A DNA stretch of 64,000 nucleotides from Macrostomum hystrix (GCA_950097015.1 CATNEN010000002.1:8742001-8806000); one strand, 5' to 3'. Shown: positions 11,404-46,900, counted from the stretch's first letter. Notes: a model not told the origin generated them from the letters alone. Numbers and translations: made by a program.

Positions 11404-11450
11404 TATACAATGCCAGTGATAAACGGCTATTCGTACTGCAAAGTTTTAAA

Positions 11451-19550: not shown

Positions 19551-20225
19551 AATACATTCTAGAATAGACTGGTTTGCTCACTAACTGGGCTGAAAGGAAT
19601 TCCCAGCACAAGTGTTCTTTTGTCTGTGAAGATGCGTTTTGCAATAAATTTTTCAGCCAAGTTTTAGCGTTTCGTCTTGTCACTAAGGCATCTTGCCTTT
19701 AGTGTGATCAAATGGCTAGGCTGTCGGCATGTAAAACAACCATAAGCCTATGGCAACCTGGGGCAACATGAGGCAATGGTCTATTAGCTCGTACGTACGC
19801 TACTGCACGCAGGTATTCATAAATTAGTCTCATAAAATATTAATAAGTTTTCTGTACCCGGAAAAAACTGTCGTAGGAGACGCGCCATTGTTGGCTTCGC
19901 ATTGGCTTCCATTGCAAGCTTCTGGAAATATTTCTCCATTATAGCCACGGTGGAATCGACTGTCGCGCTTTTCATTTTTGGGCATTCTATAAGCTTGTGT
20001 GCATTTTTAACAATTCATGCTCAGTAGATACTGCCTTAGCTGACTGGAGCTGCATCGTATTTAAATTGATGCACTCACGTGCACTCACGCACTTCGAGTC
20101 GACAAGAGGGTTCCGGCCAGTCATGCCAGTGACCAAAGAATTCTGCGAAGCGACTTTGCTTGTTCTCGAATGATTTTCGGGTGACAAGCGAGTTTATTCA
20201 AGTAAAAACTATAGATAAATTACAA

Positions 20226-20454
20226 CAATTGCAGCAGGGCTGCAGGCAATGCCAATCAGCCCTGACTGTCGCATCGTCAGGCAGTGTACACTTTCACTAT
20301 TGTACCGATGAGAATGGACCTCAAAGGCGCAAATTGCACAACAAGCCCACAAGCCCTCTATCTGCCCCAAATGCAAAGTGTGGCTTCGACGTGGAATCGA
20401 GCTCAGGGACCTTGGTGCGAGAGGCACACGCGTTAACCGCTGTGCCACTCACCC
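20226..20454 (-). mobile_element. tRNA-derived SINE copy (duplicate of 6385-6613)
   Basis: Near-identical to 6385-6613. Confidence 0.75.
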
Positions 20455-20709
20455 TAAAAACTCTAGATAAAGAGTACATGAATAAACAATAACCTCTGAT
20501 TATTAAATTCAATGCTGCCACCATTGATACAAAATACAACTTTGCTGAAGAATTGAGAACTCGTTTTACTTTTCTAAGCAAGTAGTTCATTTTTTTAAGT
20601 AACCCTATGGCCCAGGAGTTCAGTAAAGCTCCGTAGCTCGAGGATGATTGTAAGTCAATGCAATGCAAATCAATTCTTTGCAAGAGATGCAAGCCGTCCA
20701 TGTCTGGCG

Positions 20710-21795
20710 TCAGCGCACCAGCCCAAAGAAGCTGCTGATTTCAGCCCCCGTCATGGTGTCGTTCACAATGGCTACGGCCTGTACCGTGCCGTTCAGAATC
20801 CGCGAATCTCCGCGCCGAAATCCCATACGGAGGCAGTAGCAGTTCAGAACAGCAGATCCAGCATATGTGTCAGCATGAGACACACTCGACACCGGCACGA
20901 TTCCCGCCTTGGAGTAGAAGCTCGGGCTCTGCGGCAGCAATGATGTCACCCCAAGCTCGGCAAAGGCGTTCGGGTTATACGTGTTTGTTGCGGAGCCAGT
21001 TATGTATACCTCAGCAGAGTAGTTAAAACGAAAAAAGAGCAAGCCCCAACCGCTTGCGTGTCCATCCCAGAAACCTGCACCAATTGCCATTGTGTCGCAT
21101 GTGTAGGTCTCAAATAGCGTGGCCTCTCTTGGTGTCACCCGCTTCAGTCTTATCAGCCAGGTGAGACCCTGCTTCAAGTTGGCGAACTCGACTCCTTCCA
21201 GCCACATCTTGGACGATACTCCGTTGAACTTGGCTCCCTCTCTGATGAACTCGACTGACTCCGACTTCCACTGCTGCGTCTGGCCGCACACCAAGTTGCT
21301 CTTGCTGGCATGCGAGTCGTCACTCATCACCCAGGCTCCACGCAGCTTTGAGCCCACACTGCTCATCAGCTTCCTGCTCAACATCATGAATTTGACGGCT
21401 CTAGCATTGGCGAATGCAGCACAGCTGTGGAGTGTGTTGATCCCATTGCTGGCTAGTGCATCGATGAGGTGGCACATAGCAATGTATTGGAACAGGGCGC
21501 ACTGGCGAGTGTCCGCGTCGAACTGGACAACCAACAGACCATCCGTTTTCTCCGCAGCGAGAGCGCAATGGTGAACAGAGCTTAATGGGGCCGTCCAAAA
21601 TGCCAGAGAGTCGCTCAGGCACTGCTTCGTCTCCAGTCTGAGCCAGTTTAAGCGACACGTGCAGCTGGTTGAAGTCACCAGGCATGCAATAGCGATCAGG
21701 GCAAGGTCTGCAGCGTGTAATTTATTTAATCCAATCAGTTTCTCAATTTGCAATTATACTAAAAAAGCAGTAGTGTGCTCACTTGTGATTAACAT
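20710..21795 (-). CDS. Secreted PAN/apple-like + LamG protein, subtype A, copy A3 (~336 aa)
   Basis: Exon 1 is 21795-21783, the intron is 21782-21708 and exon 2 is 21707-20710. It is the segmental duplicate of A2, with a few substitutions (e.g. K>M, P>R, D>N and an A1-like tract). Confidence 0.85.
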
Positions 21796-22317
21796 GATCC
21801 TTGCTTCGTTTTTTTAGCCTTTAGGCCTTCAGAAGGTATCCAGAAACGTTTCCCCTGTTCTACAGATTTTTCTACTTTTTCTACAGATTGTTCTTCTTTT
21901 TACTCGTAATGGTTCGAAGGGTCGTCGCGTTTCCGTTTGCTATTGTTTGTAACCTCTTGGCATGTTCTCCGATGCTGTGTATTTTCTGCAGTCTCTAATG
22001 AAGCCAGCTGCTACGTCTTTTTGCTATGCAACAATTTGTTCCGCAGCTTGACCGCCAATCAAGCGACCTGCCTAATCATGAAAGAAATTTCCCTGGGCCT
22101 TTACTTCACGCTTTTGTCTAGAATTTTTGAATCTTTCATTGTTAAGCTTAAAGGACTGATACTTTGATGGCCTGTCGTTAACATCACAGCTTTTTAGTTG
22201 CTAAGAAATTTGACAGTATTTAGCTTAAAACTTTTTGTCTAGTTCTGCAACTGTGTGGCTCGTAATAACACAGCAGCGACTTTGGCGCGCTGTTGAAAAC
22301 AAAAGGCTGCCTTCAGC

Positions 22318-22640
22318 TGTTCAGTCATGGACTGGGGTGTTCGGTCATGGACTGGGGTGTTCGGTCATGGACTGGGGTGTTCAGTCATGGACTGGGGTGT
22401 TCAGTCATGGACTGGGGTGTTCAGTCATGGACTGGGGTGTTGAGTCATGGACTGGGGTGTTGAGTCATGGACTGGGGTGTTGAGTCATGGACTGGGGTGT
22501 ACAGTCATGGACTGGGGTGTACAGTCATGGACTGGGGTGTACAGTCATGGACTGGGGTGTTCAGTCATGGACTGGGGTGTACAGTCATGGACTGGGGTGT
22601 TCAGTCATGGACTGGGTTATTCAGTCATGGACTGGGTGTT
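22318..22640. repeat. 20-bp minisatellite, shorter duplicate of 8476-8977
   Basis: About 16 units of gttcagtcatggactggggt. Confidence 0.95.
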
Positions 22641-23683
22641 GCCAACAAGAAGCTAGTTTCAGCTGTTCAGTCGCAGGCCGGCACAACGCAGCAGGCGGAC
22701 CGGCGGACCGCAGCATGAGCAGTTCCCAATGGCATCTTTGGAACTGAAAACAGTTGAGAATCACGTGTCTTGCTGCAGGACAGAAATTGTCTCTCCTGGG
22801 TTAAGATTCGAACTCTATACCTAATTGGTTGTGAGTCAGAAGCTAAAACTTGCACCGGGCTTCAATTTCTGCTAAATTTTACTAAATAAATTTTACTAAA
22901 GTTTACCAAAAGGTGGAGTAATAGGTAATTCTAGCAAGCGGATGCCAGGCAAATGGATTTATGAAATTTAATAGAATCTGTTGTTTCCCCATTTGTCTGT
23001 AGTTCGACATCGCTGTGGAAATTTGAGCATTTGGTGTGTTTTCTGCCTTCTGTCTTCGCAAATGCCTTCACTATTTTTTTTATTTTACTTTTATTCCCAA
23101 GGGCAACATGCTGAGCCATCTCAGCTGAAACTGCAAGCATGTTCCTTTTTAAGGCTGCCATTGTGGAAATCAAGCAGATAGGGCGCGCAGCCCTGAGAAA
23201 TGAACAGCCGTCACTCTGAAACTACGCTACAGTCAATTGAGTTGATGTGAGAAACGACATGTGGCAAAAGTATGAAAAAACGTCAGGTAAAAATAAAAAG
23301 CAAAGCAGTTGAAATTTTCTCTCATTAAGACATCTAAAGACATTAACTAAAAGATTCGCATATCAGTGAGGTACCACAAACAGCTGCTGCCATTACCTCA
23401 TTACTTTGGTCTTTTGACGAAAATGATTTCCATAGCAACGACGCAGCGAATCTTTAATAGGTTCCACATGCAGGCTTGGAACACTGACGGAGAGTGACCT
23501 TCGTGCCAGGCAAGCCAGCTTGGAGTTCCTCTGCCGTTTGACATCATTTTTGGATACTGACATACTGTGATCCGAGTTGGCGTATAGGTCAAGGACTTTT
23601 TAATTACAAGCTAGTAATACTTTAGTAACCTTAGTAGTACATGTTAGTAGTAAAGTAGTATACCTTAAAAGTCCATAAAACAT

Positions 23684-24033
23684 TGCTGGAAGGCTGCGGG
23701 CAATGACGCATCACTTGGTGACACTAGACCTGCAGCCAGCCAGGAGGCAATTCTGCCCATTTCGCTGACTCCTGAGCATACACTCACACATTTAACAGTA
23801 CGCAGGCACACGCTCGCATAGGTGCGTACATCTGCCCTGACTTTCTCATCGTCAGGCAGTGTACACTTCACTGCGCCTACGAGTTTCCCCCTTCAGAGCG
23901 CAAATTGCACGACAATCCCCCAAGCCTTCTCCCCGCGGCTGCGCCCCAAATAAATGTGGCCTCGCCGTGGAATCGAGCTCAGCGACCGTGGTGCCAGGGG
24001 CAAACGCGTTAGAACCGCTCTGCCACTCACACC
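23684..24033 (-). mobile_element. tRNA-derived SINE copy (duplicate of 10014-10353)
   Basis: Same flanks and body as 10014-10353, with a locally divergent patch near 23775-23825. Confidence 0.85.
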
Positions 24034-24204
24034 TCTTAGTAGTACTTGGTATAGGTGAGCCGAATTTTCATGCGAAATATTCGCATCATACTACTGCCTG
24101 GCAAGGCGTTTTAATCCGCTGACATTTCACTGTGATTAGTCTCATACCAAAGCTGACACTACTGGCCACCAACACACTCCGTTTAAAAAGTTTATTTTTC
24201 TTAG

Positions 24205-24355
24205 CCGGATGGTCTCCGTGAAAATCTGAGAGGCGCCACCTTGCAGAGGTCACAGTTGACGCCGACTTCCACGAAGATGCTCGAGTCGAAGGTGTTCGTG
24301 GACTAGGCTGTCCGAAACTCAGCAGCAGTCGGTTCGAACCTAGGGAATTAAAAGC
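24205..24355 (-). pseudogene. Duplicate of the subtype-B relic
   Basis: Matches 10524-10674. Confidence 0.75.
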
Positions 24356-25100
24356 AACTAAAACTAGGAAATCTATCCCAAAATCCATCCCAAATCCCAA
24401 GAGCACTGGTGTTACAGTTTATATACTTCGGCAGCGGTTTCATTCACGACACTGTTGCTGCTGTGAACTGACTCTGATGAGTCCACCTTATAGACGTCTG
24501 CTATAAGGCATTGAGCAGCAAAAGGGCTTGACACTGAAGCTGAGCATCACTGAGACCTGGGGGAAGCATCCCAGGAATTAATAAATTAATAATTTATTAC
24601 CATACTCCTGAGCGCACACGCGCACACATAGCTCGTACCCTACAGATGGCAGGTTCAGAAAACTCTGGCTGATAATCGACTTAGATTCTTGCTGCCCCAC
24701 TAACGGGATGAAGGGATGGATGAAGGCGAGACGAGTTACTCGTAGTTCTTGGGCTCACATCTAATTATACCCCGTTGAGAAACTCGCGTTTATAACCATT
24801 GTACACTTTTGGAGGGGTTTTTCCCAGCCACCAATGAAGCCTGATTGTTGCACGCCTTTACTGTCTATGTCCCGAACCCCGCCAGCTCGTCTCGCTGTCT
24901 TACAGCCTTCCCCAAACTGAGTTCTCTTGCTGCCCTAAGTCAGGCGGTCTACTTTTGGACCATAGACATTTCGGGCGTGCACCAATCGACAAAATAATCG
25001 ATTGCTGCACGCCCCGCGAGACCGCTGGCTATATCCGCTCCGTGAGACTGATTGTTGCACGCCCCAACTGTCTGTGGTCCAAAAGTATACAATGCCAGTG

Positions 25101-25187
25101 ATAAACGGCTATTCGTACTGCAAAGTTTTAAACCTCGGGCGCTACGCGCCCTCGGTTAAAAACATTGCAGCACTCATAGCCGTTTAT
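25101..25187. other. 87-bp imperfect palindrome containing the empty piggyBac target site
   Basis: It has 42-bp arms (ataaacggctat...gggcgc / gcgccc...atagccgtttat), 7 mismatches and a 3-nt loop (tac). The piggyBac splits the other copy. Confidence 0.85.
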
Positions 25188-25538
25188 TACTATATCATTG
25201 CTGCATGTTTGAAAAGATCTTGTATTATGTAGCTCGTATAAAGCTCACTTTAAATATTTTTGCCTTTATTCCAGTGTATTTTTGTATATTAAAAAGTTGC
25301 ATGGATTAGAAAAACAGCGCAAGATAATATATAAAATAATTAACAAACTGCTCATGAGTTTGGATACAGTATTATACGTTGTGATTAAAAATGAAACAGG
25401 GCCGAAAACATCTCTCTTTTTTCAGTATTATAGAATATGTATTGTTCGTGTTACGAGCTCGTACTATTCAGTTCACTATAGTTAAGCCACTTGCACTCAG
25501 AGAATCGTTAGATTTCGCTACTGTCTCCCATGAATCTG

Positions 25539-26642
25539 TCAGCGCACCAGACTAAAGAAGTTGCGAATTTCATTCTCTGTCATCGTGTCATTCATGATGG
25601 CCACTGACCGGATGGTCCCCTGAAACATCCTGGAGTCGCCATGTCGATATCCGATTGTGAAGCAGGAGAAGTTCTGGGGTACCGGCGAGAAGATGTTGGA
25701 CTTGGTGACCAGCGACGGCGGCACGAAGGCAGCGTTGGAAAAGAATGTAACGTTTATCGGCGCCGAAGTAGTGACGCCGACTTCCACGAAGGCGCTCGAG
25801 TTGAAAGTGTTCGTGGACACAGATGTCGTAAACTCGGCAGTAGTCGGTGCGAACCCGGAGAAGTACAGGCCCCTATTACCTATAATTCCATCCCAGAGGC
25901 CGGACCCAACTGTGTGGGTGATGCAGTTGGCATTCTCCAGAAGCGGACACTCTTTCGGAACGCGTTTGTATCTAATTAGCCAGGTTAGAGCCTGCCCCTG
26001 GTTGCCGAAATTCACAGCTTCCAGCTTCATCTTGGACGACACTCCGTTGAACTTGGCTCCCTCACTGATGAACTCGACTGACTCCGACTTCCACAGCAGT
26101 GTCTGGCCGCACACCAAGTTGCTCTTGCTGGCTTCCTCATCGTCGCTCATCACCCACGCTGCACGCAGCTTCGAGCCCACACTGCTCATCAGCTTCCTGC
26201 TCAGCGTCATGAAGTTGACGGCTCTGGCATTGGCGAACGCAATGCATCTTTTTGGTGTGCTGATCCCATTGCTGCCTAGGGCATCGATGAGGTGGCACAC
26301 GGCAATGTACTGGAACAGCGAGCACTGGCGAGTGTCCGAGTCGAACTGAGCCACCAGCAGGCCGGTCAGTTGGCTGCCATAGACGACGCACTCGATGTCA
26401 GCCCGCGCCGATGCGCCCTGCACCGCCAGAGTCTCGGCCAGGCAGCTCGCCGTCTCGAGCCTCTGCCACTGAGCCGAGGCGGTGCAGTTGATCAGCCGGG
26501 CCAGACAGACCAGGCCGAGCAGAGCTGCACCTGAAACTGAGGCGGCATATTCGAATTATAGTATATAGAAGGTATAATGTTCCGTCGATTGAATCAAGGG
26601 CCGAAAGGTGCGAAACCTACTTGCACCAGCTCGCTTTAGCAT
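25539..26642 (-). CDS. Secreted PAN/apple-like + LamG protein, subtype B, copy B2 (~337 aa)
   Basis: Exon 1 is 26642-26621, the intron is 26620-26531 and exon 2 is 26530-25539. It is nearly identical to B1 (F>V in ECVFY/ECVVY). Confidence 0.85.
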
Positions 26643-27803
26643 GTGGGGCCGTTAGAATCCACAGTGTCCGCCACACAGAAACAGAGCTTGCAGGTCTTGC
26701 CGTCTCACTATGAATTTGAAGGTTGAAATAATATTTTTCTTGCTGGACGTACAAGACCAACGTAACCCAAGCAACCAAGACCCCCCAGCCAATGATTGTG
26801 AGTAGTGAAGAGATGAGTTTACTTGATGTCGATTGGAACCATCCGCCATTGTAAAAGGACTTTCTGTCAAAAAAGTTAATTTGTTGAAAACAGTCATCCG
26901 CCTCGTCGCTTGGAGTGAGAGGATGCCGCAGCAGCGTCATCCGTATGGCGCCATGCCAACCCACGCGTCGGTCCGCTTTCCCGCAGCTACTGGCAGGCTT
27001 GGGAGGGAGTGTTGATGACAAGTTCATTTTTATGCGGGTCTAAATATGGAGGCACACCAGGCTTCTATTGCTGCCTTTTGTCCATGCTTGATAAAAAACC
27101 AACAAGATATACGCAGAACTCATAGCTTTTTTATAGAATGTCCTTGCAACGCATAAGCGCAGTAAATTTACCAGAGGATCGCTGCAGATATCGATTTGTT
27201 TTTCATGCACAATGGGGCGTTTTTGCGAGAGGTCCTGAACTGAGAGCATACTTTGTAGCCAATGACCACTAGGAGCAGATGGACGGGAAACTGCGTTTCC
27301 TAGAAAAAGTTTATGAGGCTTGTTTTTCACCGAAAAATGCGCCATGGTGATCAGACATTTCCACTTTTTCTTCTCAAATCAGTTGACTGCGATTGAATGT
27401 GGTTGAATTTTAGTTAATACATGTAATTAAATTACACTCGCTCGACTCGAGAGTTGTGATTAGCTCGTACAAGTATTGTAGTATGTAGTTCCTGTTTAGA
27501 TTAAAAAGTGTCTAAACTGAATCAAAGTCATAGGATTCGTGCTTACTTATGCGTACTCGTACATAGATCGATCTCATCTCTCCCCTGGTTTATCGCTGGC
27601 GTAACTACTGTACTAGTCGGTACTGGAAGGCAGGCCAGTACCGTTGGTTAGCAAAGAGGCTGAGAGCTTTAAATAGACTTGCAAGACTAACTAACAAGCC
27701 AGAGGCTGAACGGCACGACTATCAACTGACACACGGACATGTGCTTGCAGCCCGCGTCAGTGCGACCAGCTGCGACCTACTGAACAGGGCTGGCCTATCT
27801 GAC

Positions 27804-29139
27804 ATGGCGTGCAAGGCGGCCTCCTCGGTCCTGACGGCTTGCGCGCTGATCTCCGCGCTGAGATTGCTGTAGCAGGGCTCGACCCCCTGCTCGCCACCAT
27901 CCCCCTAGTCCTCGCCGCCCTGGCTTTCGCCTTGGCCATCAAGTCCAGCCAATTCCTGGAGCGCCTGCTTCGCTGCATTTTTGTCGTCGGATTCGACCTT
28001 GGCGTCGGTGATATTTTCGATTAAATCAACAACTGCGCCATTCTGTGGCTGAAGTTGGCAGTGCTGGAGTTCTGCCTGACCTTCTGGCTGAGCCGCCTTG
28101 TCGCCGATCAGCCGGACAGTTCGAAGGTGGCTCGGACGCTGGCCGAGGCCGGCCGGGCCGCGGACGCCGTTGCGGCCGGCCAGCTGACCCGAGCGGAGGC
28201 CTGCGACAGGTCGGCGAAGGCCGCCCGCCTTCTCCGCCTCGCGCACGACTTTCTAGCGGCTCGATTCGCCTTCTCACTATGAAAAGGCGAACTGGAAGAT
28301 GGCGAGACCGGCGAGATCGACGACTGGCCGGACTTCGGCTCGAATGCGTCCGAGGCAGTTCTGACAGGTTCTGGTGGACAGATTGAGAAACTTTATGAGC
28401 ATGTTTGAGCATCTGCTAGCTAGAGATGACTGCTACTGTTAGTAGCCATACACGAGTATGAGACTGCTCGCCTCCTGCTCACTTCCTGCTCAACTCAGGC
28501 TCTCTGAACACGGCGCTGTCGCACCTGCTGCCAGCGCAGGAGTTTGCGTGCTCCCCGCTGCGCCAGCTGCTGCTGCACTCCCTGCGTGTCAGGCTGTGCA
28601 AACCTGCTGTGACATACCTGGCTGAGCTCCTCCTGCCGCACTGGTTGCTGTCGGCCGGTAAGGCTTCCGACGGCCGAGTCGCTCTGTTTGGCTTGGCTGA
28701 CGATGACACCGCTGCTGATGAGGCCGATCTGGCAGCTGATGGAGACGATGGCTCCGAGGAATCGGAGACTGACGAAAGGAAGGATGTCTCCGTAGACTTC
28801 AGGAAGGATGTCTCCGTAGGCTTCAGGAAAGATGTCATCGTAGGCTTCAGGAAGGATGTCTCCGTAGGCTTCAGGAAGGATGTTTCCGTAGGCTTCAGGA
28901 AAGATGTCATCGTAGGCTTCAGGAAGGATGTCTCCGTAGGCTTCAGGAAGGATGTTTCCGTAGGCTTCAGGAAGGATGTCTCCGCAGGCTTCAGGAAGAA
29001 TGTTTCCGTAGGCTTCAGGAAGGATGTCTCCGTAGGCTTCAGGAAGAATGTTTCCGTAGGCTTCAGGAAGGATGTCTCCGTAATGAGAACTCAGGGAAGG
29101 GAGTGGGGCAATGAGAACTCAGGGAAGGGAGTGGGGTAA
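27804..29139 (+). pseudogene. Duplicate of the decayed PXA-like sequence
   Basis: Same sequence and same disabling stops as 16769-18284, and it runs into the fused minisatellites. Confidence 0.5.
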
Positions 29140-34285: not shown

Positions 34286-35410
34286 TCCAATGTGCCAATG
34301 AAGCCGGCAGTGGGAATGTCTCTGGTTTCAAAGCCCGCATGCAATCTGCTAGTCATCAATCACGGGATTTCATGTGAGGTTTTATTTCTCATTCGGTCTC
34401 TGCTCGTGAATAGTTGCTCTAGTGTGTCAAAGCTTTCAGTTCGATATGATTTAATTCCCTTTTCTGATATTTGAGTAGGCAGCGGCTTCTCAATTCGGCT
34501 ATGACTCAGCCAAGACGAAGATTGGAAATCTTCTAATCTGTTTGAGCATAGACTCAAAGTTACGGGGACTCACTTTCCCTGAGTATCGCCGGCCAGGCAG
34601 GCAGGCAGGCAGACAGTTGGGGAGCCGCGCTAGACCCCAGGTGGGTTAAGCCGGTTGGGGAGGTGGGGTGGGCGCGGATGACACGGTGATCTGCCGTTGA
34701 GTTGCCTGAGACACTGGCGTTCCAAGAGCTGCAAATTTAGCTTACTGACGGCGGTGACTAAGAGGGCCTGCCTCAAGCAGAAACTTGGCGCGGAGGAAGA
34801 GCGGGGAATCGCTACAAGCTCCCAACCCCCTCCCAAGGCCAGCTCAGCTTGGGCGATCGCCGTTGAAACTGCCCGGCAGGGATAGGGAATTGGGATTTTT
34901 AACAAGCCCTGCCACAAAATTTGCCCCATTTTCTCATGCCCAACCCTACGCGGTCGGCAGCTCAGGTGTGCCCGCAATGGCAGCTGCTTTTAGCCTCCGT
35001 CTACTGCTGCTCCCATTCTCTCTCCCTGTCGACTGGGGCGGGCCGAGGGAGGGCAGCCACCCCACCGCCAGCCAACCCCAGGGCAGGCGTGTCTGCCCGC
35101 AGTAGGAAGTGCCGGTCTGTATAAAGCAGGAGGGCTTGAGTCGGCAGCAATGACCGCGTCTCTTCCTTGCTTACTTTGCCAACGCCTGCCTTCTGCGCCT
35201 GTCATCGCATTGTTTAGTTGCTAGGCTAAGCGAAGGACTGTTTTGTAGTCATTGATTTTTGTTTGGCCCCAGTCTGATATCGATTTCGATCAGGCCACCG
35301 ACCGGCGCGAGCTGTTATTTGAGTCCCCCCTGAGTCCAGCTAGCCACCGGCACAGTTGAGCACAGTTGAGCACAGTTGCATTGAGCCAAGCGTACCAGCA
35401 GCTGGGAGAC

Positions 35411-38400
35411 ATGATCAAGAGCCGCTCAGCCTTCAACATGCCGAGCAGCCGGCCCAGGAGAAGTGAGTTCTTGTTTGAGCATTGTTTTTAGTATTCTAGT
35501 TGGCGTACTGTGGGCTCACGGTTCATTAAACTGTTTGCTAATCTGGTGAATGCAGAAACTTAAACGATCACACCTGCTGTGAGAGTCAGAGAGAGTCAGA
35601 GAGTCAGAGAGTCAGAGAGTCAGAGAGTCAGAGAGTTAGAGAGCCAGAGAGTCAGAGAGTCAGAGAGTCAGAGAGTCAGAGAGTCAGAGAGTCAGAGAGT
35701 CAGAGAGTCAGAAAATCTGAGAGAGTCAGAGAGTCCGAGAGTCCGAGAGTCAGAGAGTCAGAAAATCAGAGAGAGCCAGTGAGCCAGAGAGTCAGGTAGT
35801 CGGCACCCTTGGAAGCAGCCACTGAAGCACCACCGCCAACGCCAATCTCTGCAGTCTGGCTGAACGGAGTCGGCGCCCAGAACGGCAGTGGCAAGGAGGA
35901 GGAGCTGCGCAAGTCGCTGCCCTACTGCGACACGGAGACCGGCACCAAGAACCGAGGTTCGAATCCTGCTGCACAGCTTTTATACCTTTTCTGATCGTTT
36001 CGTGTAATTAAAAAATTACAAATTATGAAATTACATTTTCGCCTACGCATTTGACCTGTTCTGAATTGCAGTGGTCGAGAGGGACCCCATCGCTGGCCTG
36101 GGTCTCCTGGGCAAGGAGTATGACCCGTTCCTGGAGACTCGACAGAGCAGCACGCCAAGGACAGCCAGAGACCGCGGTGAGCTGCGGGTGGACTGACGGG
36201 AGATTGGAGTCTGAGAGACGAGAGTCAGAGAGAAGAGAGTCAGAGAGAAGAGAGTCAGAGAGAAGACAGTCAGAGAGAAGACAGTCAGAGAGACGAGAGT
36301 CAGAGAGAAGAGAGTCAGAGAGAAGAGAGTCAGAGAGACGAGAGTCAGAGAGAAGACAGTCAGAGAGAAGAGAGTCAGAGAGACGAGAGTCAGAGAGACG
36401 AGAGTCAGAGAGAAGAGAGTCAGAGAGAAGACAGTCAGAGAGAAGACAGTCAGAGAGAAGACAGTCAGAGAGACGAGAGTCAGAGAGAAGACAGTCAGAG
36501 AGAAGACAGTCAGAGAGAAGAGAGTCAGAGAGAAGAGAGTCAGAGAGAAGACAGTCAGAGAGAAGACAGTCAGAGAGAAGACAGTCAGAGAGAAGACAGT
36601 CAGAGAGAAGACAGTCAGAGAGAAGACAGTCAGAGAGAAGACAGTCAGAGAGAAGACAGTCAGAGAGAAGACAGTCAGAGAGAAGACAGTCAGAGAGAAG
36701 ACAGTCAGAGAGAAGACAGTCAGAGAGAAGACAGTCAGAGAGAAGACAGTCAGAGAGAAGACAGTCAGAGAGAAGACAGTCAGAGAGAAGAGAGTCAGAA
36801 GGAGATGATTCAGGACGTCAAGCTCAGTAATGGCTGAATCAGAGAGTCGGAGACCATCTCAAAGCCGGAGAGACTAGCTTCAAGGCGCCTGTTGCGCACG
36901 CAGACTCGAGCCGGAATCCAATTCTCGGCGAGGGCAACCTCGGCCAGGAGGTGAATCTGTTCAACCGGCCAGACGGATACAAGAGCAACAGAAAGAGTGA
37001 GTTGCTAAGGCAGAGGAGAGACGTAAGAAAAAAGGGGATGAGACAGAGAGGGAGAGATTGGGATGTAGAAAAGGAGAGGACATGCTGTACTGTGATGGGA
37101 TCTAGCATGGAGCTCTGAATGAGAGACAACTCCCCGCCAAACCCCCATTTTCCGGACCAGTGTATGCTGAGAGAGACCTTCGAATATCCTATCTGCCCAG
37201 TGCATTTTCGGGACAGCCAGTCAGCCTACACTGGTCTGGCTCTCCCAGTTTCTGACTCAAGCTACAGGGGCAGGGGCATAGAGTAGTGGGAGAAGTCTAA
37301 CAAGCATCAGGGACCTCTGCCGCATCCGCAGGCCGCAATCCGCTTCAACCGGAGCCGCAAAGCGCCGATGACGACAAACTGCGGCCCCGCGGACGACCCG
37401 GCAAAGTCAGCATTCACCAAGGTGAGCAGCGCTTAACCTTAGGCAGTCAAAATAGTGAAGGAGTTGCTGAGCCGTTTCCATGCTTAATTTATTCTCTACC
37501 GCTTCATTTCTAATCAGTATTTTGCTACAACAATGGTCCAGGCCAGACCGTGGGACTGGGGGGGGGCATTTTATTGCGGCACAATTTCCACATCACTGAA
37601 ATTTACTGGCTAGCGAGGGCAGCTGCGAATTTGGCCAGTCTGTTTTTCCTACTTAATTTGCTACCGTTGCAATGATTTGTTTCGTTTGCTTTAGAAGCGA
37701 ATATAAAAAAGCACACTGGACTCATGCGTGCTTTGCTACGCATTGCGTTATCCTCGTGCAAGTTTTGTGAAATTTTCTTCTAAATTTCTGCTTCTCATTG
37801 CTGGTACAGCTGAGACCGCATTATGTAAATTATTCAGGCCCGTTGCCTTATAAGCGAGCAGTTTGGGACAGTGCTTGACGAAGGGATTATGCTAATTTGA
37901 CATGCCTTTCCGTCACTTGGGCGAAGTTTGTTTATCTGTTTTATCTGGCGTGGTAAAATACATTCTCGGTCAATAGCACTGAGGTATGTATATTATCAGC
38001 TGCTTGAATCATACTGCAGGCCTAGAAACAGAATTCTTGGCTACTTCTCTATCCAAACCTGTGCGCATAACAAATAAGTCGAGCAACTGTTTTGAGCACA
38101 CCCCCACACTCCCAACCCCGACTTGACACCTCAAGCTAACACACACCCCCACACTCCCAACCCCGACTTGACACCTCAAGCTAACACACACCCCACACTC
38201 CCAACCCCGACTTGACACCTCAAGCTAACACACACCCCACACTCCCAACCCCGACTTGACACCTCAAGCTAACACACACCCCACACTCCCAACCCCGACT
38301 TGACACCTCAAGCTAGCACACACCCCCACACTCCCAACCCCGACTTGACACCTCAAGCTAACACACACCCCACACTCCCAACCCCGACTTGACACCTCAA

Positions 38401-41400
38401 GCTAGCACACACCCCCACACTCCCAACCCCGACTTGACACCTCAAGCTAACACACACCCCCACACTCCCAACCCCGACTTGACACCTCAAGCTAGCACAC
38501 ACCCCCACACTCCCAACCCCGACTTGACACCTCAAGCGAACACACACCCCCACACTCCCAACCCCGACTTGACACCTCAAGCTAACACACACCCCACACT
38601 CCCAACCCCGACTTGACACCTCAAGCTAGCACACACCCCACACTCCCAACCCCGACTTGACACCTCAAGCTAGCACACACCCCACACTCCCAACCCCGAC
38701 TTGACACCTCAAGCTAGCACACACCCCCACACTCCCAACCCCGACTTGACACCTCAAGCTAACACACACCCCACACTCCCAACCCCGACTTGACACCTCA
38801 AGCTAGCACACACCCCCACACTCCCAACCCCGACTTGACACCTCAAGCTAACACACACCCCCACACTCCCAACCCCGACTTGACACCTCAAGCTAGCACA
38901 CACCCCAACACTCCCAACCCCGACTTGACACCTCAAGCTAACACACACCCCACACTCCCAACCCCGACTTGACACCTCAAGCTAGCACACACCCCACACT
39001 CCCAACCCCGACTTGACACCTAAAGCTAACACACACCCCACACTCCCAACCCCGACTTGACACCTCAAGCTAGCACACACCCCCATACCCCCACCCCCCG
39101 ACTTGACACCTCTAGCTAGTCCACACTCCAGACCCCAGCTACAATTTAAGAAACCGAGTGCAAGTCCAGGACAAGCCTGACGACAAGCCTCCCCCTTTAA
39201 TTTTTTCAGCTCAGCGAGATCCGATCTCCGGTCGCGGCGAGTTCGGTCGCGAGTGGGACCCGGTGCACAAGTACGCCGGACGGCCCAGACCCTGGCATCA
39301 GCGCGCAGCGGACGGTGAGTCTCGGCCATAGACTATGCGATATTTTGCCGCCGCGGACACCCCGGGTCACGAGATTTCTAATCTCAGCAAGCTGCGCCCC
39401 CCCCGAAATCTCGCACTCGCCAGATCCCCGCTATTACAAGTTCAGCGAGAGGCCCTCGGTGTCCAAAACTGATCAGAAGTACATTTTCGGCTACTATGGT
39501 ACAGGCTAAATCGATGAAGTCCACACTTCCCATTGTTCATTATATATTTTTTCATTTAATCTTCTCGTTTTTTGCGAAAAGCATGAGTCAGTTTTCAGAG
39601 TCTTCGTTTCGCTCATTGGAGTCGTGTTTTGCATGCCGTTTCACTGCAGGCTAATGAGATTTCCTACATGTAGCGGTTTTGCGCTACTAAAAGCTCACCA
39701 GCCGGCTTTCCTAGGCCAAAATGTTGTCTGGTATTTGTGTCTCATCGACTCATTTGCAGCGAGGAAATTTAGCTTGAAATGAATTGTTTCTTTGTATTTG
39801 TTTTGTTTCATTTTTCATATCTTACTAAAATTTAACTTGAATTGCTACTGACAGTCAGAGAGTAGTGTACTGCGCATATACAATGCATGATTTAAAAACG
39901 ATTAATTCTCGCAGCCAAGCGCGGCGGCCGCTGCAACCCGCTGACCGGCGAGGACGCCAAGACTTTCGACATCAACCAGGAGCTGCGTCGAACGCCTAGG
40001 AAGGGAATGAGTGAGTTTCGCTAGCCAAACTTTGACAGTTTGCAATATACTACTCGTAATATATTGCAAAGTAGCCTATATTGCGCATTGGTAAATTTCG
40101 CTCACCACAGAAAAAAGTAACCCAGTGACTGGCGAGAACTGCGAAAGTTTCACTGTGTCAGACAAGATGAATGAAAAGAACGTAAAAACTGGCGCCAGAA
40201 AGACTGCCCGGGGTGAGTCAGATTTGAAGCTGGCACTCGGAATCTGTCTCTCAGAACCTGTCACTAGGAATCTGTCACTCAGAAAGTGTAACACAGAATG
40301 TGTCACTCGGAATCTGTCACCCGGAATGTGTCACACAGAACCTGTCACTCGGAATGTGTCACTCGGAATGTATCACTCAGAATGTGTCACTCATAATGTG
40401 TCACTCAAAATCTGTCACTCAAAATCTGTTACTCGGAATCTGTCACTCGAAATCTGTCACTCAAAATCTGTCACTCAAAATCTGTCACTCAAAATCTGTC
40501 ACTCAGAATCTGTCACTCGAAATCCGTCAATTAGAATGTGTCACTCGGAATCTGTCACTCAGAATCTGTCAATCAGCATCTGTCACGCGGAGTCTGTCAC
40601 TCAGAATATTGAAGCTGTCGCTATCTGGTAAATGTTTTAAATTCTGAGCTCTAGGTCAAGGTCAAGGTCAAGGTCACTCTATGGTTGTCTGCGACTCTTC
40701 AAACCGATGTTTTCCATTTCCAGGGGGCAACCCAGTCACCGGTGAGAACTGTAAATCCTTTGACTTCAACATCGAGTCGAAGTCGGCCGGAAGTTCGCCG
40801 AGGAAGGCGGCTGCGGGTGGCAACCCGGTGACGGGAGAAAACTGCACCGTGTACGCCTACAGCAGCGAGTTCAAGCCGAAGCCGAACAAGCCGAACGGTG
40901 AGCCAGAGCCTGATGACCGAATTATAATGACCAGAACAGCATGACTAGAATCGAATGACCGAAATAGAATGACCAAAACAGCATGACTAGAATCGAATGA
41001 CCGAAATAGAATGACCAGAACAGCATGACTAGAATCGAATAACCAAAATATAATGACAAGAACAGCATGACTAGAATCGAATGACCAAAATATAATGACA
41101 AGAACAGCATGACTAGAATCGAATGACCAAAATAGAATGACCAGAACAGCATGACTAGAATTAAATGACCTATAGCCAAAATAAATAACCTGAATCAGAG
41201 TTTTATGGCTTTACACTTTCTGTGTTCGATCATCAGCTGGTCATATGTGAAAGGTCATCTGAGTTTATAGATCAGCAGAATATTAAAAGCGGACGCTCAA
41301 ATGATGAGTTTGAGTTTGATTGACAGCGTGTTGAGTCAGTCAGTGCGAACTGACCACAGTTAGCCCTGGCCATTGTAGAGCGCAAAAATCCTTTAACTGG

Positions 41401-43931
41401 CGAGAATGTGAGCAGCTTTGTGCTCAAACTCACTGAGCGGGCCGACCAGCCGCCTAAACAGACGGAGCCCTACAGCCCGAGTATGATGAAGCTGCTGCTT
41501 GCTCAAAGCCTCTGCTGAGTCGATCAGCTCAAACTTTCCTAGCACTTACTTTCCCCCCAACCCCTATGCTCAGCTTGGAAATGGAATTTCATCTCTTTGA
41601 GAACTGTTCCGAGAGGAGCAACTTTTGAGCATTTCAGTCCAGAGGCATCTAATAGGCAAATGCATGCTGCTCCAGTGTGGCAGGATTCCTTGGTTACTGG
41701 CTGTCAGAACTTTCTCTGCATGAACAAAGCTTTTCAATTTCATTCGTCTACAGAGCGGTTAACGCGTTGGCCTGTCGCACCAAGGTCCCTGAGCTCGATT
41801 CCGCGGCGAGGCCACATTTATTTTGGGCGCAGCCGCGAAGAGAAGGCTTGGGGGCTTGTCGTGCAATTTACGTCCTTGAGGGCCTATCTCGTAGGCGCAG
41901 TGAAATGTACACTGCCTGACAATGAGAAAGTCAGGGCAGATGTACACACTGTGTGAGTGTGTGCTCAGGAGTCAGCGGAACGGCAGAATTGCCTGCTCGC
42001 TGGCTGCGGGTCCAGTGTCACCAAATGATGTGCATTGCCCGCAGCCCTCCCGCAGTTATTACTCGTAATTTTATTAATCTATCTAGACGGCTTGGTATTG
42101 GAAATTTTAACAACAGTTTAACAACAGTGTATGTCTTATTGTCTGCATGCACGCCATATTATTTCCTTTATCCCATACTTATAATACCAAAATTTATCCC
42201 ATCGCACACTCGACGCGGCTCGGTAATATCCAGGCGAGGCCAAGAACCCGCTGACCGGAGCCAACTGTCCCAGCTTCACCGTCAGCAGCGAAGACCGGCC
42301 AAAGACTGCGCCGGGAGCTCTGCAGGCGACCCGTGAGACTCCATTTTTCCTCCTTTTTCTCCCTGATCCAATTTATCTAGTTATCTACCGAGTCTAATCC
42401 GAATCTCAACCGAATTTCAACCGAATCTCAACCGAATCTTAACCGAATTTCAACCGAATCTCAACCGAATCTTAACCGAATTTCAACCGAATCTTAACCG
42501 AATCTTAACCGAATTTCAACCGAATCTTAACCGAATCTCAACCGAATTTCAACCGAATCTCAACCGAATTTCAACCGAATCTCAACCGAATCTTAACCGA
42601 ATTTCAACCGAATCTTAACCGAATTTCAACCGAATCTTAACCGAATTTCAACCGAATCTTAACCGAATTTCAACCGAATCTCAACCGAATCTCAACCGAA
42701 TCTCAACCGAATTTCAACCGAATCTCAACCGAATCTTAACCGAATTTCAACCGAATCTCAACCGAATTTCAACCGAATCTCAACCAAATCTTAACCGAAT
42801 TTCAACCGAATCTTAACCGAATCTCAAGTGAACTTCTCTCAAATCTCATTTGTATCTCAACCGAATCTATCCCATATCTCACCTGAGACTCAACTAAATC
42901 TCATCTGAAACCGATCACACCGCAACCTCACCCGAGCAGCGCGGGCCTCATCCAACCCTGTCACCGGTGAGGGCTGCCGTCACTATGTACTGTGCACTGG
43001 CGAGAAGAAAATGTCGAGCAGCCCACAGACACCACGGGAGCCGGTCAGCAACCCGCTGACTGGCAGCAACGTCCGCTGCTTCGACATCAACCAGGAGATG
43101 CGCGTCAACCGTCGGGCTACCGATGGTGAGTTCTCATTCCCTTGCTGGACATCGCTGACTCTTTGACTGTCTGACTCTCTGACTCTATGACTCTCTGAAT
43201 CTCTGGCTCTCTGACTCTCTGACTCTCTGACTCTCTGACTCTCTCTGGCTCTCTGACTCTCTGACTCTCTGGCTCTCTGACTCTCTGACTCTATGACTCT
43301 CTGACTCTCTGACTCTCTCTGGCTCTCTGACTCTCTCTGGCTCTCTCTGGCTCTCTGACTCTCTCTGACTCTCTCTGACTCTCTGACTCTCTCTGGCTCT
43401 CTCTGGCTCTCTGACTCTCTCTGACTCTCTCTGACTCTCTGACTCTCTCTGGCTCTCTGACTCTCTCTGGCTCTCTCTGGCTCTCTGACTCTCTCTGACT
43501 CTCTCTGGCTCTCTGACTCTCTGACTCTCTGGCTCTCTGACTCTCTGACTCTATGACTCTCTGACTCTCTGACTCTCTCTGGCTCTCTGACTCTCTCTGG
43601 CTCTCTCTGGCTCTCTGACTCTCTCTGACTCTCTCTGGCTCTCTGACTCTCTCTGACTCTCTCTGGCTCTCTGACTCTCTAACTCTCTGACTCTCTGACT
43701 CTCTGACTCTCTGACTCTCTGACTCTCTGACTCTCTGACCAATATTGAAAAGGCGCCAAGCCGGCTGAAAACGGACACCAAACCAACGGCCTGAGCTGCG
43801 ATGTTGCGACCGTGTCAGGTGAGACGCCGCCTTGACATTTGAATCGATGATTCCCCAGTTCAATGTACGAATTACACCTGTCAATCACCGTCGGTATTGC
43901 AGCTCGCAGCAACCCCATCACAGGAATGTGA
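35411..43931 (+). CDS. 15-exon gene for a ~491-aa NP[V/L/I]TG-repeat protein of unknown family
   Basis: Exons: 35411-35462, 35855-35956, 36072-36176, 36904-36996, 37332-37421, 39210-39314, 39424-39498, 39915-40010, 40111-40212, 40724-40897, 41379-41480, 42234-42332, 42940-43125, 43753-43818, 43903-43931. All introns are GT-AG and phase 1, every internal exon is a multiple of 3, and the joined frame has no stop until SNPITGM*. Weakest points are the exon-2 donor (gttcga) and the exon-14 acceptor (aag). AATAAA lies at 44281-44286. Confidence 0.8.
35581..35795. repeat. (gagagtca)n-type minisatellite in intron 1
   Basis: Tandem units are directly visible. Confidence 0.95.
36207..36798. repeat. 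15-bp minisatellite (cagagagaag[a/c]cagt / agagt variants) in intron 3
   Basis: About 39 units. It is the source of the spurious SERRQ ORF. Confidence 0.95.
38096..39118. repeat. 44/45-bp minisatellite (cacacacccccacactcccaaccccgacttgacacctcaagcta[a/g])n in intron 5
   Basis: About 23 units. Confidence 0.95.
40238..40605. repeat. Degenerate 14-bp minisatellite (aatctgtcactc[a/g][a/g])n in intron 9
   Basis: Tandem units are directly visible. Confidence 0.85.
40925..41170. repeat. 42-bp minisatellite (catgactagaatcgaatgaccgaaatagaatgaccagaacag)n in intron 10
   Basis: About 6 units. Confidence 0.9.
41750..42078 (+). mobile_element. tRNA-derived SINE copy in intron 11
   Basis: The plus strand has the head gagcggttaacgcgttggcctgtcgcaccaaggtccctgagctcgattccgcgg, the shared body and an AT-rich tail after cagccctcccgcag. 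Confidence 0.85.
42397..42826. repeat. 11-bp minisatellite (aaccgaat[c/t]t[c/t])n in intron 12
   Basis: About 39 units. Confidence 0.95.
43156..43739. repeat. (tgactctc)n-type minisatellite in intron 13 (reverse complement of the intron-1 array)
   Basis: Tandem ctctga/ctctgg units are directly visible. Confidence 0.95.
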
Positions 43932-46900
43932 GGCCTTCACGGATAGCTGAAGCTGGGTGACGCACGGTTGACTCACGAAGCAGCTCACGGACAGCTCACC
44001 TTATCGACAATTGCAGCCCTGTCTCTGAAGTCCTCAAGCTGTCATATTCTCTTTGTTCTCCTCCGCCTGCTCGTAACAAATTAAATTTCGGTGTCGCTTT
44101 TTACTATTTTACCCGTTTTTATTGCTTTCTAGTTCCACAGCAGCATGCAAGCTGCCGGAACTTCAACGCCGATAATCATTTTCAGCTGAAAGTCAATTTG
44201 TTTTCCTGTTGCTAACCGTTCGATTGAATCTCCGATCCAATCAGGTGCTGCCGTTTTCAAAACACCTCTTCAGCCCCGCCAATAAAGCCGCTTTATCAGT
44301 TTTTATCAGTTTTTATTGCTACTCCAGAAATCTACTGCCATCTAATCGGTGACTAGCTTTTGTTTAATTCTCCTTTGTTAAAACAGCAACAGTTTTGCTT
44401 TGAATTTTCTCGATTTTGCTTTCGGCGGCTTTCAGTGCCACTTTTTTTGAAGGAAATTTTCCTTGCTGCCTGAGTTGGTTCTGCTGGTGGATTTTGTTAA
44501 TTTCGTTGAATTGTTTCTTTTTTAATTCGAGAAAAAACTCATCTTGGCCATCGCGCATGTACATGTCCCGCTGTTACTGCGTACTCTGCCTTGCATACTG
44601 TAACTTTTTATTAACTTGTGTAGTAGAAAAAAAACAAAAAAGTTGCATTGCGGGATAGTTAGAAATTCTGTTGAAAACTGTGCGCAATTCTGAGTCATAT
44701 TAATGATTTCCGCTCTGTAAAAGTACATTCTGCTCATCCCTGATTCGCGCGAAATCTTAATAAATATTGACTACCCTCTTCCAAGCTGACGGCTTGTCTG
44801 AACAGAATTTTCCTGGAATTGATTTTCCGCTGCAAACTCCAACTTGCCTACTGCCAGTAGGGTAGTTGGATAGCTGAGAGCGAGTAATAGGAAAATTTGC
44901 TTACTGACAGAAATATTTACAAAATTGGTACGCTGGAGCTGAGAGAAGTGAATGGAGTGAGAGATTCAGGTGACAGAAAATCTCGGGTAATGAAACCAGT
45001 AAGTGTTAGCGGTATTTTCAAAACCGAACGCATTTTTGAGTTCGTTCTCAATGAGAACAGATTGATAGAAATTTCAATTTTATTTTGATAAAAATTAGTC
45101 AGGCTTCGAGATTTTCCAGGCGATCGGTTGAATATTTTAGGAGATACGGAACAAAAATAATAATTTGGGTATATGAAATACCCCTTGGTGTTTCTCCGGT
45201 TAACTGGATCACTCATCGGAGCCTCCTAAACTTCGCGGTGAAACTTCAACCCAACGATTCGCTACACTTTTGTTTGAGTGTACAAATTGGAATATGAAAT
45301 TTTGAAATTCGAAGCCTCTTAAGGCCGCATATTTGTCACAGTGCCGCGGAGTTTATTTAACAAATTAGTTTCCTACTTTCTCAGAGCACCAGAAAAGTCA
45401 AACACTTTGCAAACCGCTTATTTTCATAGTTACGCATGCGCGCAGTTTTTGTTGTTGAAATAATTTTCTATGCATGACTCTAACTCGCGCAAGCCTCCGA
45501 AGTGGCAGATCGCTACATTTCACTCGTGGAGTAACGATTTAGGCTGGTGTAGCTGCTCATTCACTCGCAGACTTGCCAAAGCTACTCAGCTGCAGTAGTG
45601 TGTGAGGCTCTAGCCCTGCAGCGATTTCTCTGTGACTTATCCCAATAAATTGCATAGCCAATCAACACTGAGTCAAAACCTGAGCAAGGTGCAGACTTAC
45701 ATAATTTCATCCGGCCTTCTTAATTATTTGCTGTAATTAAATTTTCAATGCAATTAATCTGGGACTGTGGCTACAGTCAGCACAGTCGGGCATGGACACT
45801 CTCGGCTTATGCGCTGACACGGAGGGCCGCTTTTGTCGGCTCGTTCTCAGCCTCAGGGGCCGGCCCCGCCCCCCACCCCGGGGCTGTAACACTGGATAAT
45901 TGCTTTGTAATGCTATTAGCGGGCCTGCGCGTACGGGGCCAGTTCGTGTTTCACTCACTCAGGGCTTCCAAGAACTTCAATGGAACACTTCTTCTCGGGG
46001 CCTTCTTTGGGATTTCAAAAAAATCGTTTTAATTCATTCGATTCGAATGAGTCAGTGTGGACGAAGAGCGGTTCTGAAATTTGGTTAGGCTCCGCTTGAA
46101 ATGCGGCTGGCTCTGATTGAAGCCAATTTGTTGGCAAGTCGGACGGGAAACCTCAGCTTTATTGTCCTCGCACATGAGACCTCGCTCAAAACTAGTCAAA
46201 TATTTTTTGTATTGAGTACTGTTCTCAAAATGTCTCAAAACAGCTCACACTTACTCATCATATCGATTGTCAAGTGTCCTGATTAAATTGATTAATTCGA
46301 TTAAAATCTTGATTGCAAACTTCAAACGTCTGTCTTAAAAAATAGGAGACAAAAAGCAGCAAATCATTTCCCATCCTGCAGGCTCGGGATTTTCCCCTGG
46401 GGAGTCGCCAAAGTCTGAGTCCGCCCGAGTTCTCAAAGACTTCGAAATGGAAAAACAGCTGAAAAAATGCAAGTCGAAAAAGTCGAATTGCCAGTTCATT
46501 TATCAACTGAACACAAAATCATAAAAAATGTGCAGGAGACTGTCTGCAGCAACAGCTGCCGTCCATTCGGTCGATATTGTGGAATGATGGAGCAGGTCTG
46601 AGGGGTCAGGGCCTCCAAAAATATTCGTGTTTCATGGCGACATGAAAAACCATCAGCGACTGAAATATTCAGAGAGGCAGCAGGGCGCTCTCAGTCCAAG
46701 AAATTCTCAAAGCTGAGTATGAAAAGATGGATGAATTTGCTGAGTTGGGCAAAGAAAATTTTTCGAGAATTTTTTGTGCAAACAGAAGCTGCTAAAATGG
46801 GGAGTGGACAGGGTTTAAGAGGGATCTGTTTTGGCCGCCTGTGGAATGATGAGAACCTCTGTTTATACATTTATACTCAAATAATTCCAGGCTCCGGGCG

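What the first reader, a model, noticed from the sequence alone, without database searches (positions are those of the whole stretch)
35411..43931. Hidden 15-exon gene encoding an NP[V/L/I]TG-repeat protein, about one motif per symmetric phase-1 exon
Seen: 15 small exons buried among minisatellites join into one stop-free frame of ~491 aa. All 14 introns are phase 1 and every internal exon is a multiple of 3 (66-186 nt, mostly 90-105). Thirteen motif copies occur, usually near an exon start: RDPIAG, RNPILG, RNPLQP, RDPISG, CNPLTGEDAKTF, SNPVTGENCESF, GNPVTGENCKSF, GNPVTGENCTVY, KNPLTGENVSSF, KNPLTGANCPSF, SNPVTGEGCRHY, SNPLTGSNVRCF and the terminal SNPITGM*. Linkers are polar, Pro/Ser/Lys/Arg-rich and look disordered. 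Knowledge: symmetric same-phase exons are the signature of growth by exon duplication, and they allow in-frame skipping. From memory, Drosophila Jupiter (a microtubule-associated protein) contains a similar GNPVTGEG motif, although no PPGG motif is present here. Inference: a modular, possibly alternatively spliced microtubule or ciliary binding protein. Its ~30-35 aa motif spacing recalls lattice-binding repeat proteins such as SAXO/SPM1.
Basis: partly seen in the sequence, partly recalled or inferred. Interest (0 to 1): 0.85.

Follow-up and report, generated by a model that had tools for sequence, protein, structure and literature searches.

The report
Flatworm Jupiter-derived repeat protein gene
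A real, spliced flatworm gene encodes a floppy protein carrying 13 copies of a short motif that resembles a loop known to plug into the taxol-binding pocket inside microtubules of single-celled organisms, so it may be an animal multi-plug microtubule stabiliser, but binding has not been shown.

Summary
Confirmed. Fifteen exons give a stop-free 491-aa frame; all 14 introns are phase 1. Spliced contigs support six junctions and show that exon 7 (75 nt, no motif) is skipped about half the time. The gene is the orthologue of Macrostomum lignano Mlig009188/Mlig011212 (86% identity, dN/dS 0.10). It belongs to an uncharacterised family of flatworms (mis-named 'surface protein PspC' in flukes and tapeworms; S. 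mansoni Smp_150640) and ribbon worms. The 13 units and the all-phase-1 layout are conserved to Schistosoma and Echinococcus. It is not a canonical Jupiter (no PPGG, no Pfam hit), but probably descends from Jupiter's NPVTG module: beetle Jupiter-like genes carry NPVTG on the same kind of phase-1 exon, and the Lineus homologue keeps one PPGG motif. New lead: the repeat core matches GYNPITGEY, the CFAP213 loop that binds the beta-tubulin taxane pocket, for which the authors found no homologue in 'higher eukaryotes'. Caveat: NPxTG is a generic turn, and bacterial FG-GAP repeats score equally well. Best reading: a disordered multivalent microtubule binder (about 0.7), probably luminal (about 0.45), with splicing tuning spacing. 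The scan found a paralogue of this family before in this genome (s1-381986), without the CFAP213 link.

The parts
35120..35125 (+). TATA-like box; probable transcription start near 35150-35165, 5' UTR about 250 nt
35411..35462 (+). Coding exon 1 (ATG)
   Evidence: same length and N-terminus in the M. lignano orthologue
35855..35956 (+). Exon 2, no listed motif; carries a conserved L..LP..DxETG.K.R block; weak donor GTTCGA
   Evidence: block conserved in all 18 flatworm rows
36072..36176 (+). Exon 3, type-A unit (RDPIAG)
36904..36996 (+). Exon 4, type-A unit (RNPILG)
37332..37421 (+). Exon 5, degenerate type-A unit (RNPLQP)
   Evidence: its 3' end is the loose end before exon 6 in three runs
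39210..39314 (+). Exon 6, type-A unit (RDPISG..FG.EWDP), among the best-conserved blocks
   Evidence: Spliced contigs; alignment A4
39424..39498 (+). Exon 7, 75-nt cassette without motif, included in about half of transcripts
   Evidence: Joints 6>7, 7>8 and 6>8; present in Mlig009188, absent from Mlig011212; in locus L001 at 9519-9596
39915..40010 (+). Exon 8, type-B unit (NPLTGED)
40111..40212 (+). Exon 9, type-B unit (NPVTGENC)
40724..40897 (+). Exon 10, two type-B units
   Evidence: Loose end after exon 9; also a doublet exon in Schistosoma and Echinococcus
41379..41480 (+). Exon 11, type-B unit; weak donor GTATGA shared with M. lignano; possibly alternative
   Evidence: contigs of X5 and X1 end exactly at the end of exon 10, an indirect sign of a branch
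42234..42332 (+). Exon 12, type-B unit
42940..43125 (+). Exon 13, two type-B units
43753..43818 (+). Exon 14, linker without motif
43903..43931 (+). Exon 15 coding part: terminal unit SNPITGM and stop (YNI[IL]TG in flukes and tapeworms)
43932..44640 (+). Probable 3' UTR; AATAAA at 44281 and 44759; end not mapped
   Evidence: four runs hold 0.90 of the words of 43753-44640, two of which proved to be spliced RNA

Best explanation
The gene makes a basic (pI 9.7), intrinsically disordered protein: a string of 13 short turn motifs (4 type A, R[DN]PI[SAT]G.G.[LF]G.E; 8 type B, NP[LV]TGENC.[ST][FY]; 1 at the C-terminus), mostly 28-39 residues apart. SHOWN: the gene, its splicing, the cassette exon, purifying selection strongest on motif cores, and conservation of unit number, order and exon phase across flatworms. 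INFERRED (fairly strong): the unit descends from the NPVTG exon of the Jupiter/HN1 family, multiplied by exon duplication before free-living and parasitic flatworms split, with loss of the PPGG repeats. INFERRED (moderate): each NPxTG turn folds on binding into the taxane pocket of one beta-tubulin on the microtubule's inner wall, as the GYNPITGEY loops of CFAP213 do. The basic linkers would span to the next pocket, along a protofilament (8 nm) or to the neighbouring one. Many weak plugs would give avid binding and stabilise long-lived microtubules (cilia, flame cells, sperm cortical microtubules or neurons; site unknown). Skipping of symmetric exons would change spacing or plug number, and S/T-P sites in the linkers could release it on phosphorylation. 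Microtubule binding of any mode: about 0.7. This specific luminal mode: about 0.45.
For: Model and phases. Spliced joints and exon-7 skipping. dN/dS 0.096 overall, 0.05 in cores, 0.12 in linkers. Unit-for-unit alignment in 18 flatworm proteins. All-phase-1 layout with the same two doublet exons in M. lignano, S. guineensis and E. multilocularis. In two beetle Jupiter-like genes (Pfam JUPITER), each NPVTG starts 2-5 codons after a phase-1 intron and the first sits on a symmetric 84-87-nt exon. The Lineus homologue has an N-terminal LNPPGGRVSINLF, matching JPT2's microtubule-binding LNPPGGKSSISFY (PMC12773733). CFAP213 loops GYNPITGEY occupy taxane pockets in cryo-EM (PMC11642885); the terminal unit of flukes and tapeworms reads YNI[IL]TG. 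JPT2 is luminal and competes with paclitaxel (PMC12773733). All members are basic, pI 9.0-10.2. A single-unit model shows a bridge closing the NPVTGE turn (pLDDT 68). GFG repeats of about 31 residues span one tubulin dimer (PMC10973386).
Against: No binding, localisation or tissue data: no paper names these genes and five supplement searches were blank. NPxTG is a generic turn: bacterial FG-GAP repeats match the unit profile as well (95.5%) as beetle Jupiter units do (95.6%), and flank-only scores of the Jupiter units are mostly weak. No PDB chain, FAP213 included, was found by sequence or fold. The Tyr before Asn in the CFAP213 motif is missing from all Macrostomum units. In JPT2 the tested binding motif is PPGG, which flatworm members lack; I found no paper testing Jupiter's NPVTG.
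Confidence: 0.45

Rival explanations
1. It is a microtubule-associated protein of the Jupiter lineage but binds the outer surface or tubulin tails mainly through its basic linkers (Tau/MAP-like, possibly as a condensate). The NPxTG units dock elsewhere on the lattice or on a partner.
For: Net charge +25, disorder and S/T-P-[KR] sites. Jupiter descent. JPT2 condensates wet pre-formed taxol microtubules (PMC12803092).
Against: Selection is strongest on the motif cores (dN/dS 0.05 against 0.12), which points to a stereospecific pocket rather than charge alone; the core matches a solved luminal loop.
Confidence: 0.25
2. It is a multivalent scaffold for a non-tubulin partner (a small hub protein or another filament). 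The match to CFAP213 and Jupiter is convergence on a common Asx-Pro-x-Thr-Gly turn.
For: Bacterial FG-GAP propeller repeats carry the same NPVTGEN string and score equally. No PPGG, MASNIF or Pfam JUPITER match in any flatworm member.
Against: Shared phase-1 exon module with beetle Jupiter-like genes and a PPGG motif in the same polypeptide as the array in Lineus are not explained by convergence of a turn.
Confidence: 0.24
3. It is a secreted or surface protein, as the database name 'surface protein PspC' of the parasite orthologues suggests.
For: Only the names.
Against: No hydrophobic leader or membrane segment in the sequence; no PspC Pfam match; orthologues carry unrelated automatic names (MBD, CLASP_N, histone acetyltransferase), showing that the names are noise.
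Confidence: 0.04
4. The gene model is a chance chain of short frames among minisatellites.
For: Eight junctions were not read from RNA here; exons 2 and 11 have weak donors.
Against: Spliced contigs, an 86%-identical annotated orthologue with the same exon boundaries, dN/dS 0.10.
Confidence: 0.01

Closest known systems
Uncharacterised flatworm/ribbon-worm family: M. lignano BOX15_Mlig009188g1 and Mlig011212g1 (orthologues), Mlig025565/Mlig027991 (paralogue), S. mansoni Smp_150640, E. granulosus EGR_00302, Lineus LOC135494118, Tubulanus LOC141906064
   Same: End-to-end similarity (86% to M. lignano; the M. lignano protein is 35-38% identical to fluke and tapeworm members); same 13 unit positions in order; all introns phase 1; skippable exons.
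   Different: Nothing essential: this is a member. The family has no Pfam entry, no function and wrong names; no paper in the library cites the six gene identifiers searched.
Jupiter / HN1 / JPT1-JPT2 family (Pfam PF17054)
   Same: Basic and disordered; NPVTG module on phase-1 exons as in beetle Jupiter-like genes; one PPGGxxS motif in the Lineus homologue; PPGG-less Jupiter-like genes also exist in beetles.
   Different: No PPGGxxSxxF repeats, no MASNIF, no Pfam match; 13 NPxTG units instead of 2-4 in the beetle proteins; 491 aa against 126-223 aa for the beetle proteins retrieved.
CFAP213/FAP213 (central-pair microtubule inner protein of Tetrahymena and Chlamydomonas; PMC11642885)
   Same: Motif core NP[IVL]TGE; YNI[IL]TG at the C-terminus of parasite orthologues.
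   Different: CFAP213 has two loops and long helices and is reported mainly from protists; this protein has 13 units and no long helices; no profile-level homology was found.
SAXO/MAP6 Mn repeats, PYG, GFG, SNYG and NWE modules (PMC10973386)
   Same: Short tandem units in a disordered chain; GFG unit length about 31 residues.
   Different: None of their signatures forms the repeat, and there is no Pfam match; NPxTG is not among the modules of that survey.

Membership tests
Flatworm/nemertean NPxTG-array family (unnamed) | End-to-end similarity with the same ordered units | tested here: met
   86% identity to Mlig009188; alignment A4; groups with the M. lignano orthologues at 98/99 support
Flatworm/nemertean NPxTG-array family (unnamed) | All-phase-1 exons, one unit each, two doublet exons, terminal mini-exon | tested here: met
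   nemertean gene structures could not be fetched
Jupiter/HN1 (JPT) | PPGGxxSxxF repeats (PMC12803092) | tested here: not met
   None in the model, in the window's six frames or in 17 flatworm homologues; one in Lineus
Jupiter/HN1 (JPT) | MASNIF motif | tested here: not met
Jupiter/HN1 (JPT) | Pfam PF17054 above cut-off | tested here: not met
   Ten exons, orthologues and the Lineus N-terminus all blank; beetle proteins pass
Jupiter/HN1 (JPT) | NPVTG module on a phase-1 exon, motif just after the acceptor | tested here: met
   Beetle loci L005 and L006
Jupiter/HN1 (JPT) | Microtubule binding | not testable with these tools
   Needs experiment
CFAP213/FAP213 | GYNPITGEY loop motif | tested here: inconclusive
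   Core N[PI][ILV]TG nine times in the model; the preceding aromatic is absent in Macrostomum and present in the terminal unit of most flukes and tapeworms; bacterial control scores equally
CFAP213/FAP213 | Long helices forming a lateral arc | tested here: not met
   AlphaFold shows only two short low-confidence helices
CFAP213/FAP213 | Profile-level sequence homology | tested here: inconclusive
   No FAP213 chain among PDB hits, but short motifs fall under HMMER's filters and no CFAP213 sequence could be fetched for a direct comparison
CFAP213/FAP213 | Loop seated in the beta-tubulin taxane pocket | not testable with these tools
   No multimer prediction and no tubulin sequence available
SAXO/MAP6 (Mn), PYG, GFG, SNYG, NWE modules | Signature motif or Pfam family match | tested here: not met
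   Pfam scans blank; unit logos differ from the published signatures

The most novel reading that the evidence does not exclude
NPxTG is an ancient, unrecognised taxane-pocket module shared by protist CFAP213 and animal Jupiter-lineage proteins. Flatworms multiplied it into a conserved 13-plug luminal protein whose unit count acts as a ruler (13 protofilaments around, or about 96 nm along) and is tuned by exon skipping. This would answer the question, left open in PMC11642885, of which motif animals use in place of CFAP213.
Probability: 0.25. Interest if true: 0.85.

Novelty: new variant of a known kind. Interest (0 to 1): 0.6.

Why it matters
If the units are taxane-pocket plugs, this names a new animal microtubule-lumen module and assigns a role to Jupiter's overlooked NPVTG motif. 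It would also give the highest-valency natural example (13 against 2 in CFAP213 and 3 localising PPGGK repeats in JPT2). The family is conserved in every fluke and tapeworm hit, where it is mis-annotated as a surface protein, so the finding corrects an annotation and offers a testable cytoskeletal gene. Its one-unit-per-exon design makes valency experiments simple in Macrostomum, which is amenable to RNAi and transgenesis (own knowledge).

Tried and rejected
The joined spliced protein was built only inside scripts and never sent to a search tool. Remote searches used exons by reference, alignments of exons, or the returned M. lignano orthologue as a stand-in; the joined search was left out. 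Pfam per exon: nothing. PDB sequence searches: only artefactual designed-repeat hits or none. ESM Atlas: no usable hit. Foldseek with the single-unit model: none. Full-length AlphaFold: disordered, not searched. Literature for NPVTG alone or gene ids: nothing relevant. Expression tables in five papers' supplements: no entry, and the held files are cut. Motif-level profile similarity as proof of Jupiter homology was rejected after the FG-GAP control scored the same. The TagH_SH3-like and 2C_adapt Pfam matches were rejected as the same generic turn. A possible 27-nt micro-exon at 39132-39158 had no contig depth. The one reads call went to a repeat-free stretch (39127-40225), because the tool refuses long repeats. 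UniRef names such as 'Microtubule-associated protein Jupiter' on Macrostomum entries were not counted as evidence, since sister entries carry unrelated automatic names.

Full report
1. Observation. A six-frame scan finds 13 [ND]P[VLI]xG-type motifs between 36083 and 43911, all on the + strand. There are three more in the other 55 kb, all copies of one duplicated block; shuffles of the region give 0.6 on average, 4 at most. Chaining AG/GT sites around them gives 14 exons and 466 aa. Every intron is phase 1 and every internal exon is a multiple of 3. Coding GC3 is 0.75. The protein is basic (pI 9.7), rich in R/P/S/G/N/K, and on the disordered side of the charge-hydropathy boundary. AlphaFold with an 18-row alignment gives mean pLDDT 39 and no fold. 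The joined protein was used only in local scripts; remote searches were run exon by exon or with returned orthologues.

2. Expression and splicing. Eight runs hold the 3' part. Their type is not on record, but contigs of X5, X8 and X1 laid on 39127-40225 cover the exons and, apart from one low-depth intronic piece in X8, nothing else; they join at GT..AG, so they are spliced RNA. Joints seen: exon 6>7, 7>8, 6>8 and 8>9; the loose ends are the end of exon 5 and the start of exon 10. Exon 7 is a cassette, with inclusion depth 22.7/27.9 and skipping depth 30.1/23.6. Contig lengths fit a 5' UTR of about 250 nt starting just downstream of TATAAA at 35120, and suggest a further branch after exon 10; both points are indirect.

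3. Family. A profile of the eight type-B units against 1.84 billion representatives returned 29 proteins. The best are from Macrostomum lignano, flukes, tapeworms, a monogenean, two ribbon worms and a bark beetle; the rest are unnamed fragments and long repeat proteins, two of which proved to carry FG-GAP repeats. A second round gave full-length members. M. lignano Mlig009188g1 is 86% identical end to end and includes exon 7; Mlig011212g1 lacks it. dN is 0.091 and dS 0.95, so dN/dS is 0.096 (0.05 in motif cores, 0.12 in linkers). The window is therefore most likely another Macrostomum species. The tree groups it with these orthologues (98/99), apart from a paralogue pair (Mlig025565/Mlig027991) and a third copy; among flukes and tapeworms the tree follows the expected groups. 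In 18 flatworm proteins the units align one to one: a conserved exon-2 block, four type-A units, eight type-B units and a C-terminal unit, which reads YNI[IL]TG in most parasite members. M. lignano (14 exons), Schistosoma guineensis (13) and Echinococcus multilocularis have phase-1 introns across the array and the same two doublet exons. The exon duplications thus predate the split of free-living and parasitic flatworms. In the paralogue, the exon at the cassette position carries a full NPITG unit and is also missing from a sister model, so exon 7 may be a decayed unit with old alternative splicing (inference). RefSeq isoforms of Lineus and Tubulanus differ by whole units. The name 'surface protein PspC' has no support.

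4. Relation to Jupiter. The defining PPGGxxSxxF and MASNIF motifs (PMC12803092) are absent from the model, the window and all flatworm members, and Pfam JUPITER does not match. It is not a canonical Jupiter. Three results point to descent from one. The beetle hit passes Pfam JUPITER with its NPVTG repeats, and its relatives have a Jupiter N-terminus, two NPVTG and no PPGG. In two beetle loci each NPVTG follows a phase-1 intron by 2-5 codons, and the first lies on a symmetric 84-87-nt exon, the same module as in flatworms. The Lineus homologue carries LNPPGGRVSINLF ahead of the array, 8 of 13 identical to the microtubule-binding JPT2 C-terminus given in PMC12773733. One Lineus isoform begins with a stretch (NSSRVLNPPGG) that, from memory, resembles the human JPT1 N-terminus; I could not verify this. 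Motif similarity alone proves nothing: hhalign gives 95.6% to beetle units and 95.5% to bacterial FG-GAP repeats.

5. Mechanism. A full-text search for NPITG with microtubule returned one relevant paper. PMC11642885 shows by cryo-EM that two loops of CFAP213, consensus GYNPITGEY, sit in the taxane pockets of beta-tubulin on adjacent protofilaments. Its authors found homologues mainly in protists and none in 'higher eukaryotes', and ask what motifs those organisms use. The type-B core NP[VL]TGE and the terminal YNI[IL]TG match this motif, and a single-unit model closes a turn over NPVTGE (pLDDT 68). JPT2 is luminal and taxane-sensitive through its PPGG repeats (PMC12773733), and PPGG and NPxTG units can be put in the same register (N-P-x-x-G-x4-S-F; my comparison). 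Spacing of mostly 28-39 residues could bridge 8 nm along a protofilament or the shorter step to the next one; GFG repeats of about 31 residues span one dimer (PMC10973386). The best reading is a multivalent luminal stabiliser, with splicing and proline-directed phosphorylation (five S/T-P-[KR]-type sites) as controls. All of this step is inference. No FAP213 chain was recovered by sequence or fold, the aromatic before Asn is missing in Macrostomum, and the turn is generic (own knowledge: it is the chignolin-type turn). No expression site was found.

6. Novelty and verdict. The gene is real and belongs to a database-present but unstudied family. New here are the demonstrated cassette exon, the conserved exon layout across flatworms, the shared phase-1 module with beetle Jupiter-like genes, the FG-GAP control, and the link to the CFAP213 taxane-pocket loop. 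Class: new variant of a known kind. Interest 0.6, because it makes a stated open question directly testable while function remains unshown. The coincidence of 13 units with 13 protofilaments or a 96-nm repeat is only speculation, since paralogues and isoforms have other counts.

Noticed in passing
window 35150-35224 (+): A 24-codon ATG-started frame right at the inferred transcription start; an upstream ORF if the 5' end includes its ATG.
   Followed up: no
window 3230-29082: Nested segmental duplications at 96-99% identity (3230-4254 = 6846-7870 = 20688-21712; 5699-8799 = 19540-22641; 8655-11454 = 22318-25136; 14096-18047 = 25131-29082), with 338-364-codon frames on the - strand in several copies.
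   Followed up: no
   Followed up: no
window 41379-41518 (+): Exon 11 has a weak donor (GTATGA, same in M. lignano); read-through would end in a short hydrophobic tail and a stop at 41516-41518. Contig ends hint at branches after exons 10 and 11.
   Followed up: partly
window 35590-35795, 36208-36799, 43155-43739: Related AGAGTC-type minisatellites lie in three introns, the last in opposite orientation; about half of the introns hold an array.
   Followed up: no
L005 10001-19085 and L006 10001-33795: These beetle Jupiter-like loci have no PPGG-coding sequence on the gene's strand: PPGG-less Jupiter relatives with only NPVTG motifs, natural tests of what NPVTG does alone.
   Followed up: partly
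type-B units, window 39915-43125: A cysteine often follows the motif (GENC; 43% of flatworm type-B units), unusual in a disordered cytosolic protein; possible lipidation or redox site.
   Followed up: no
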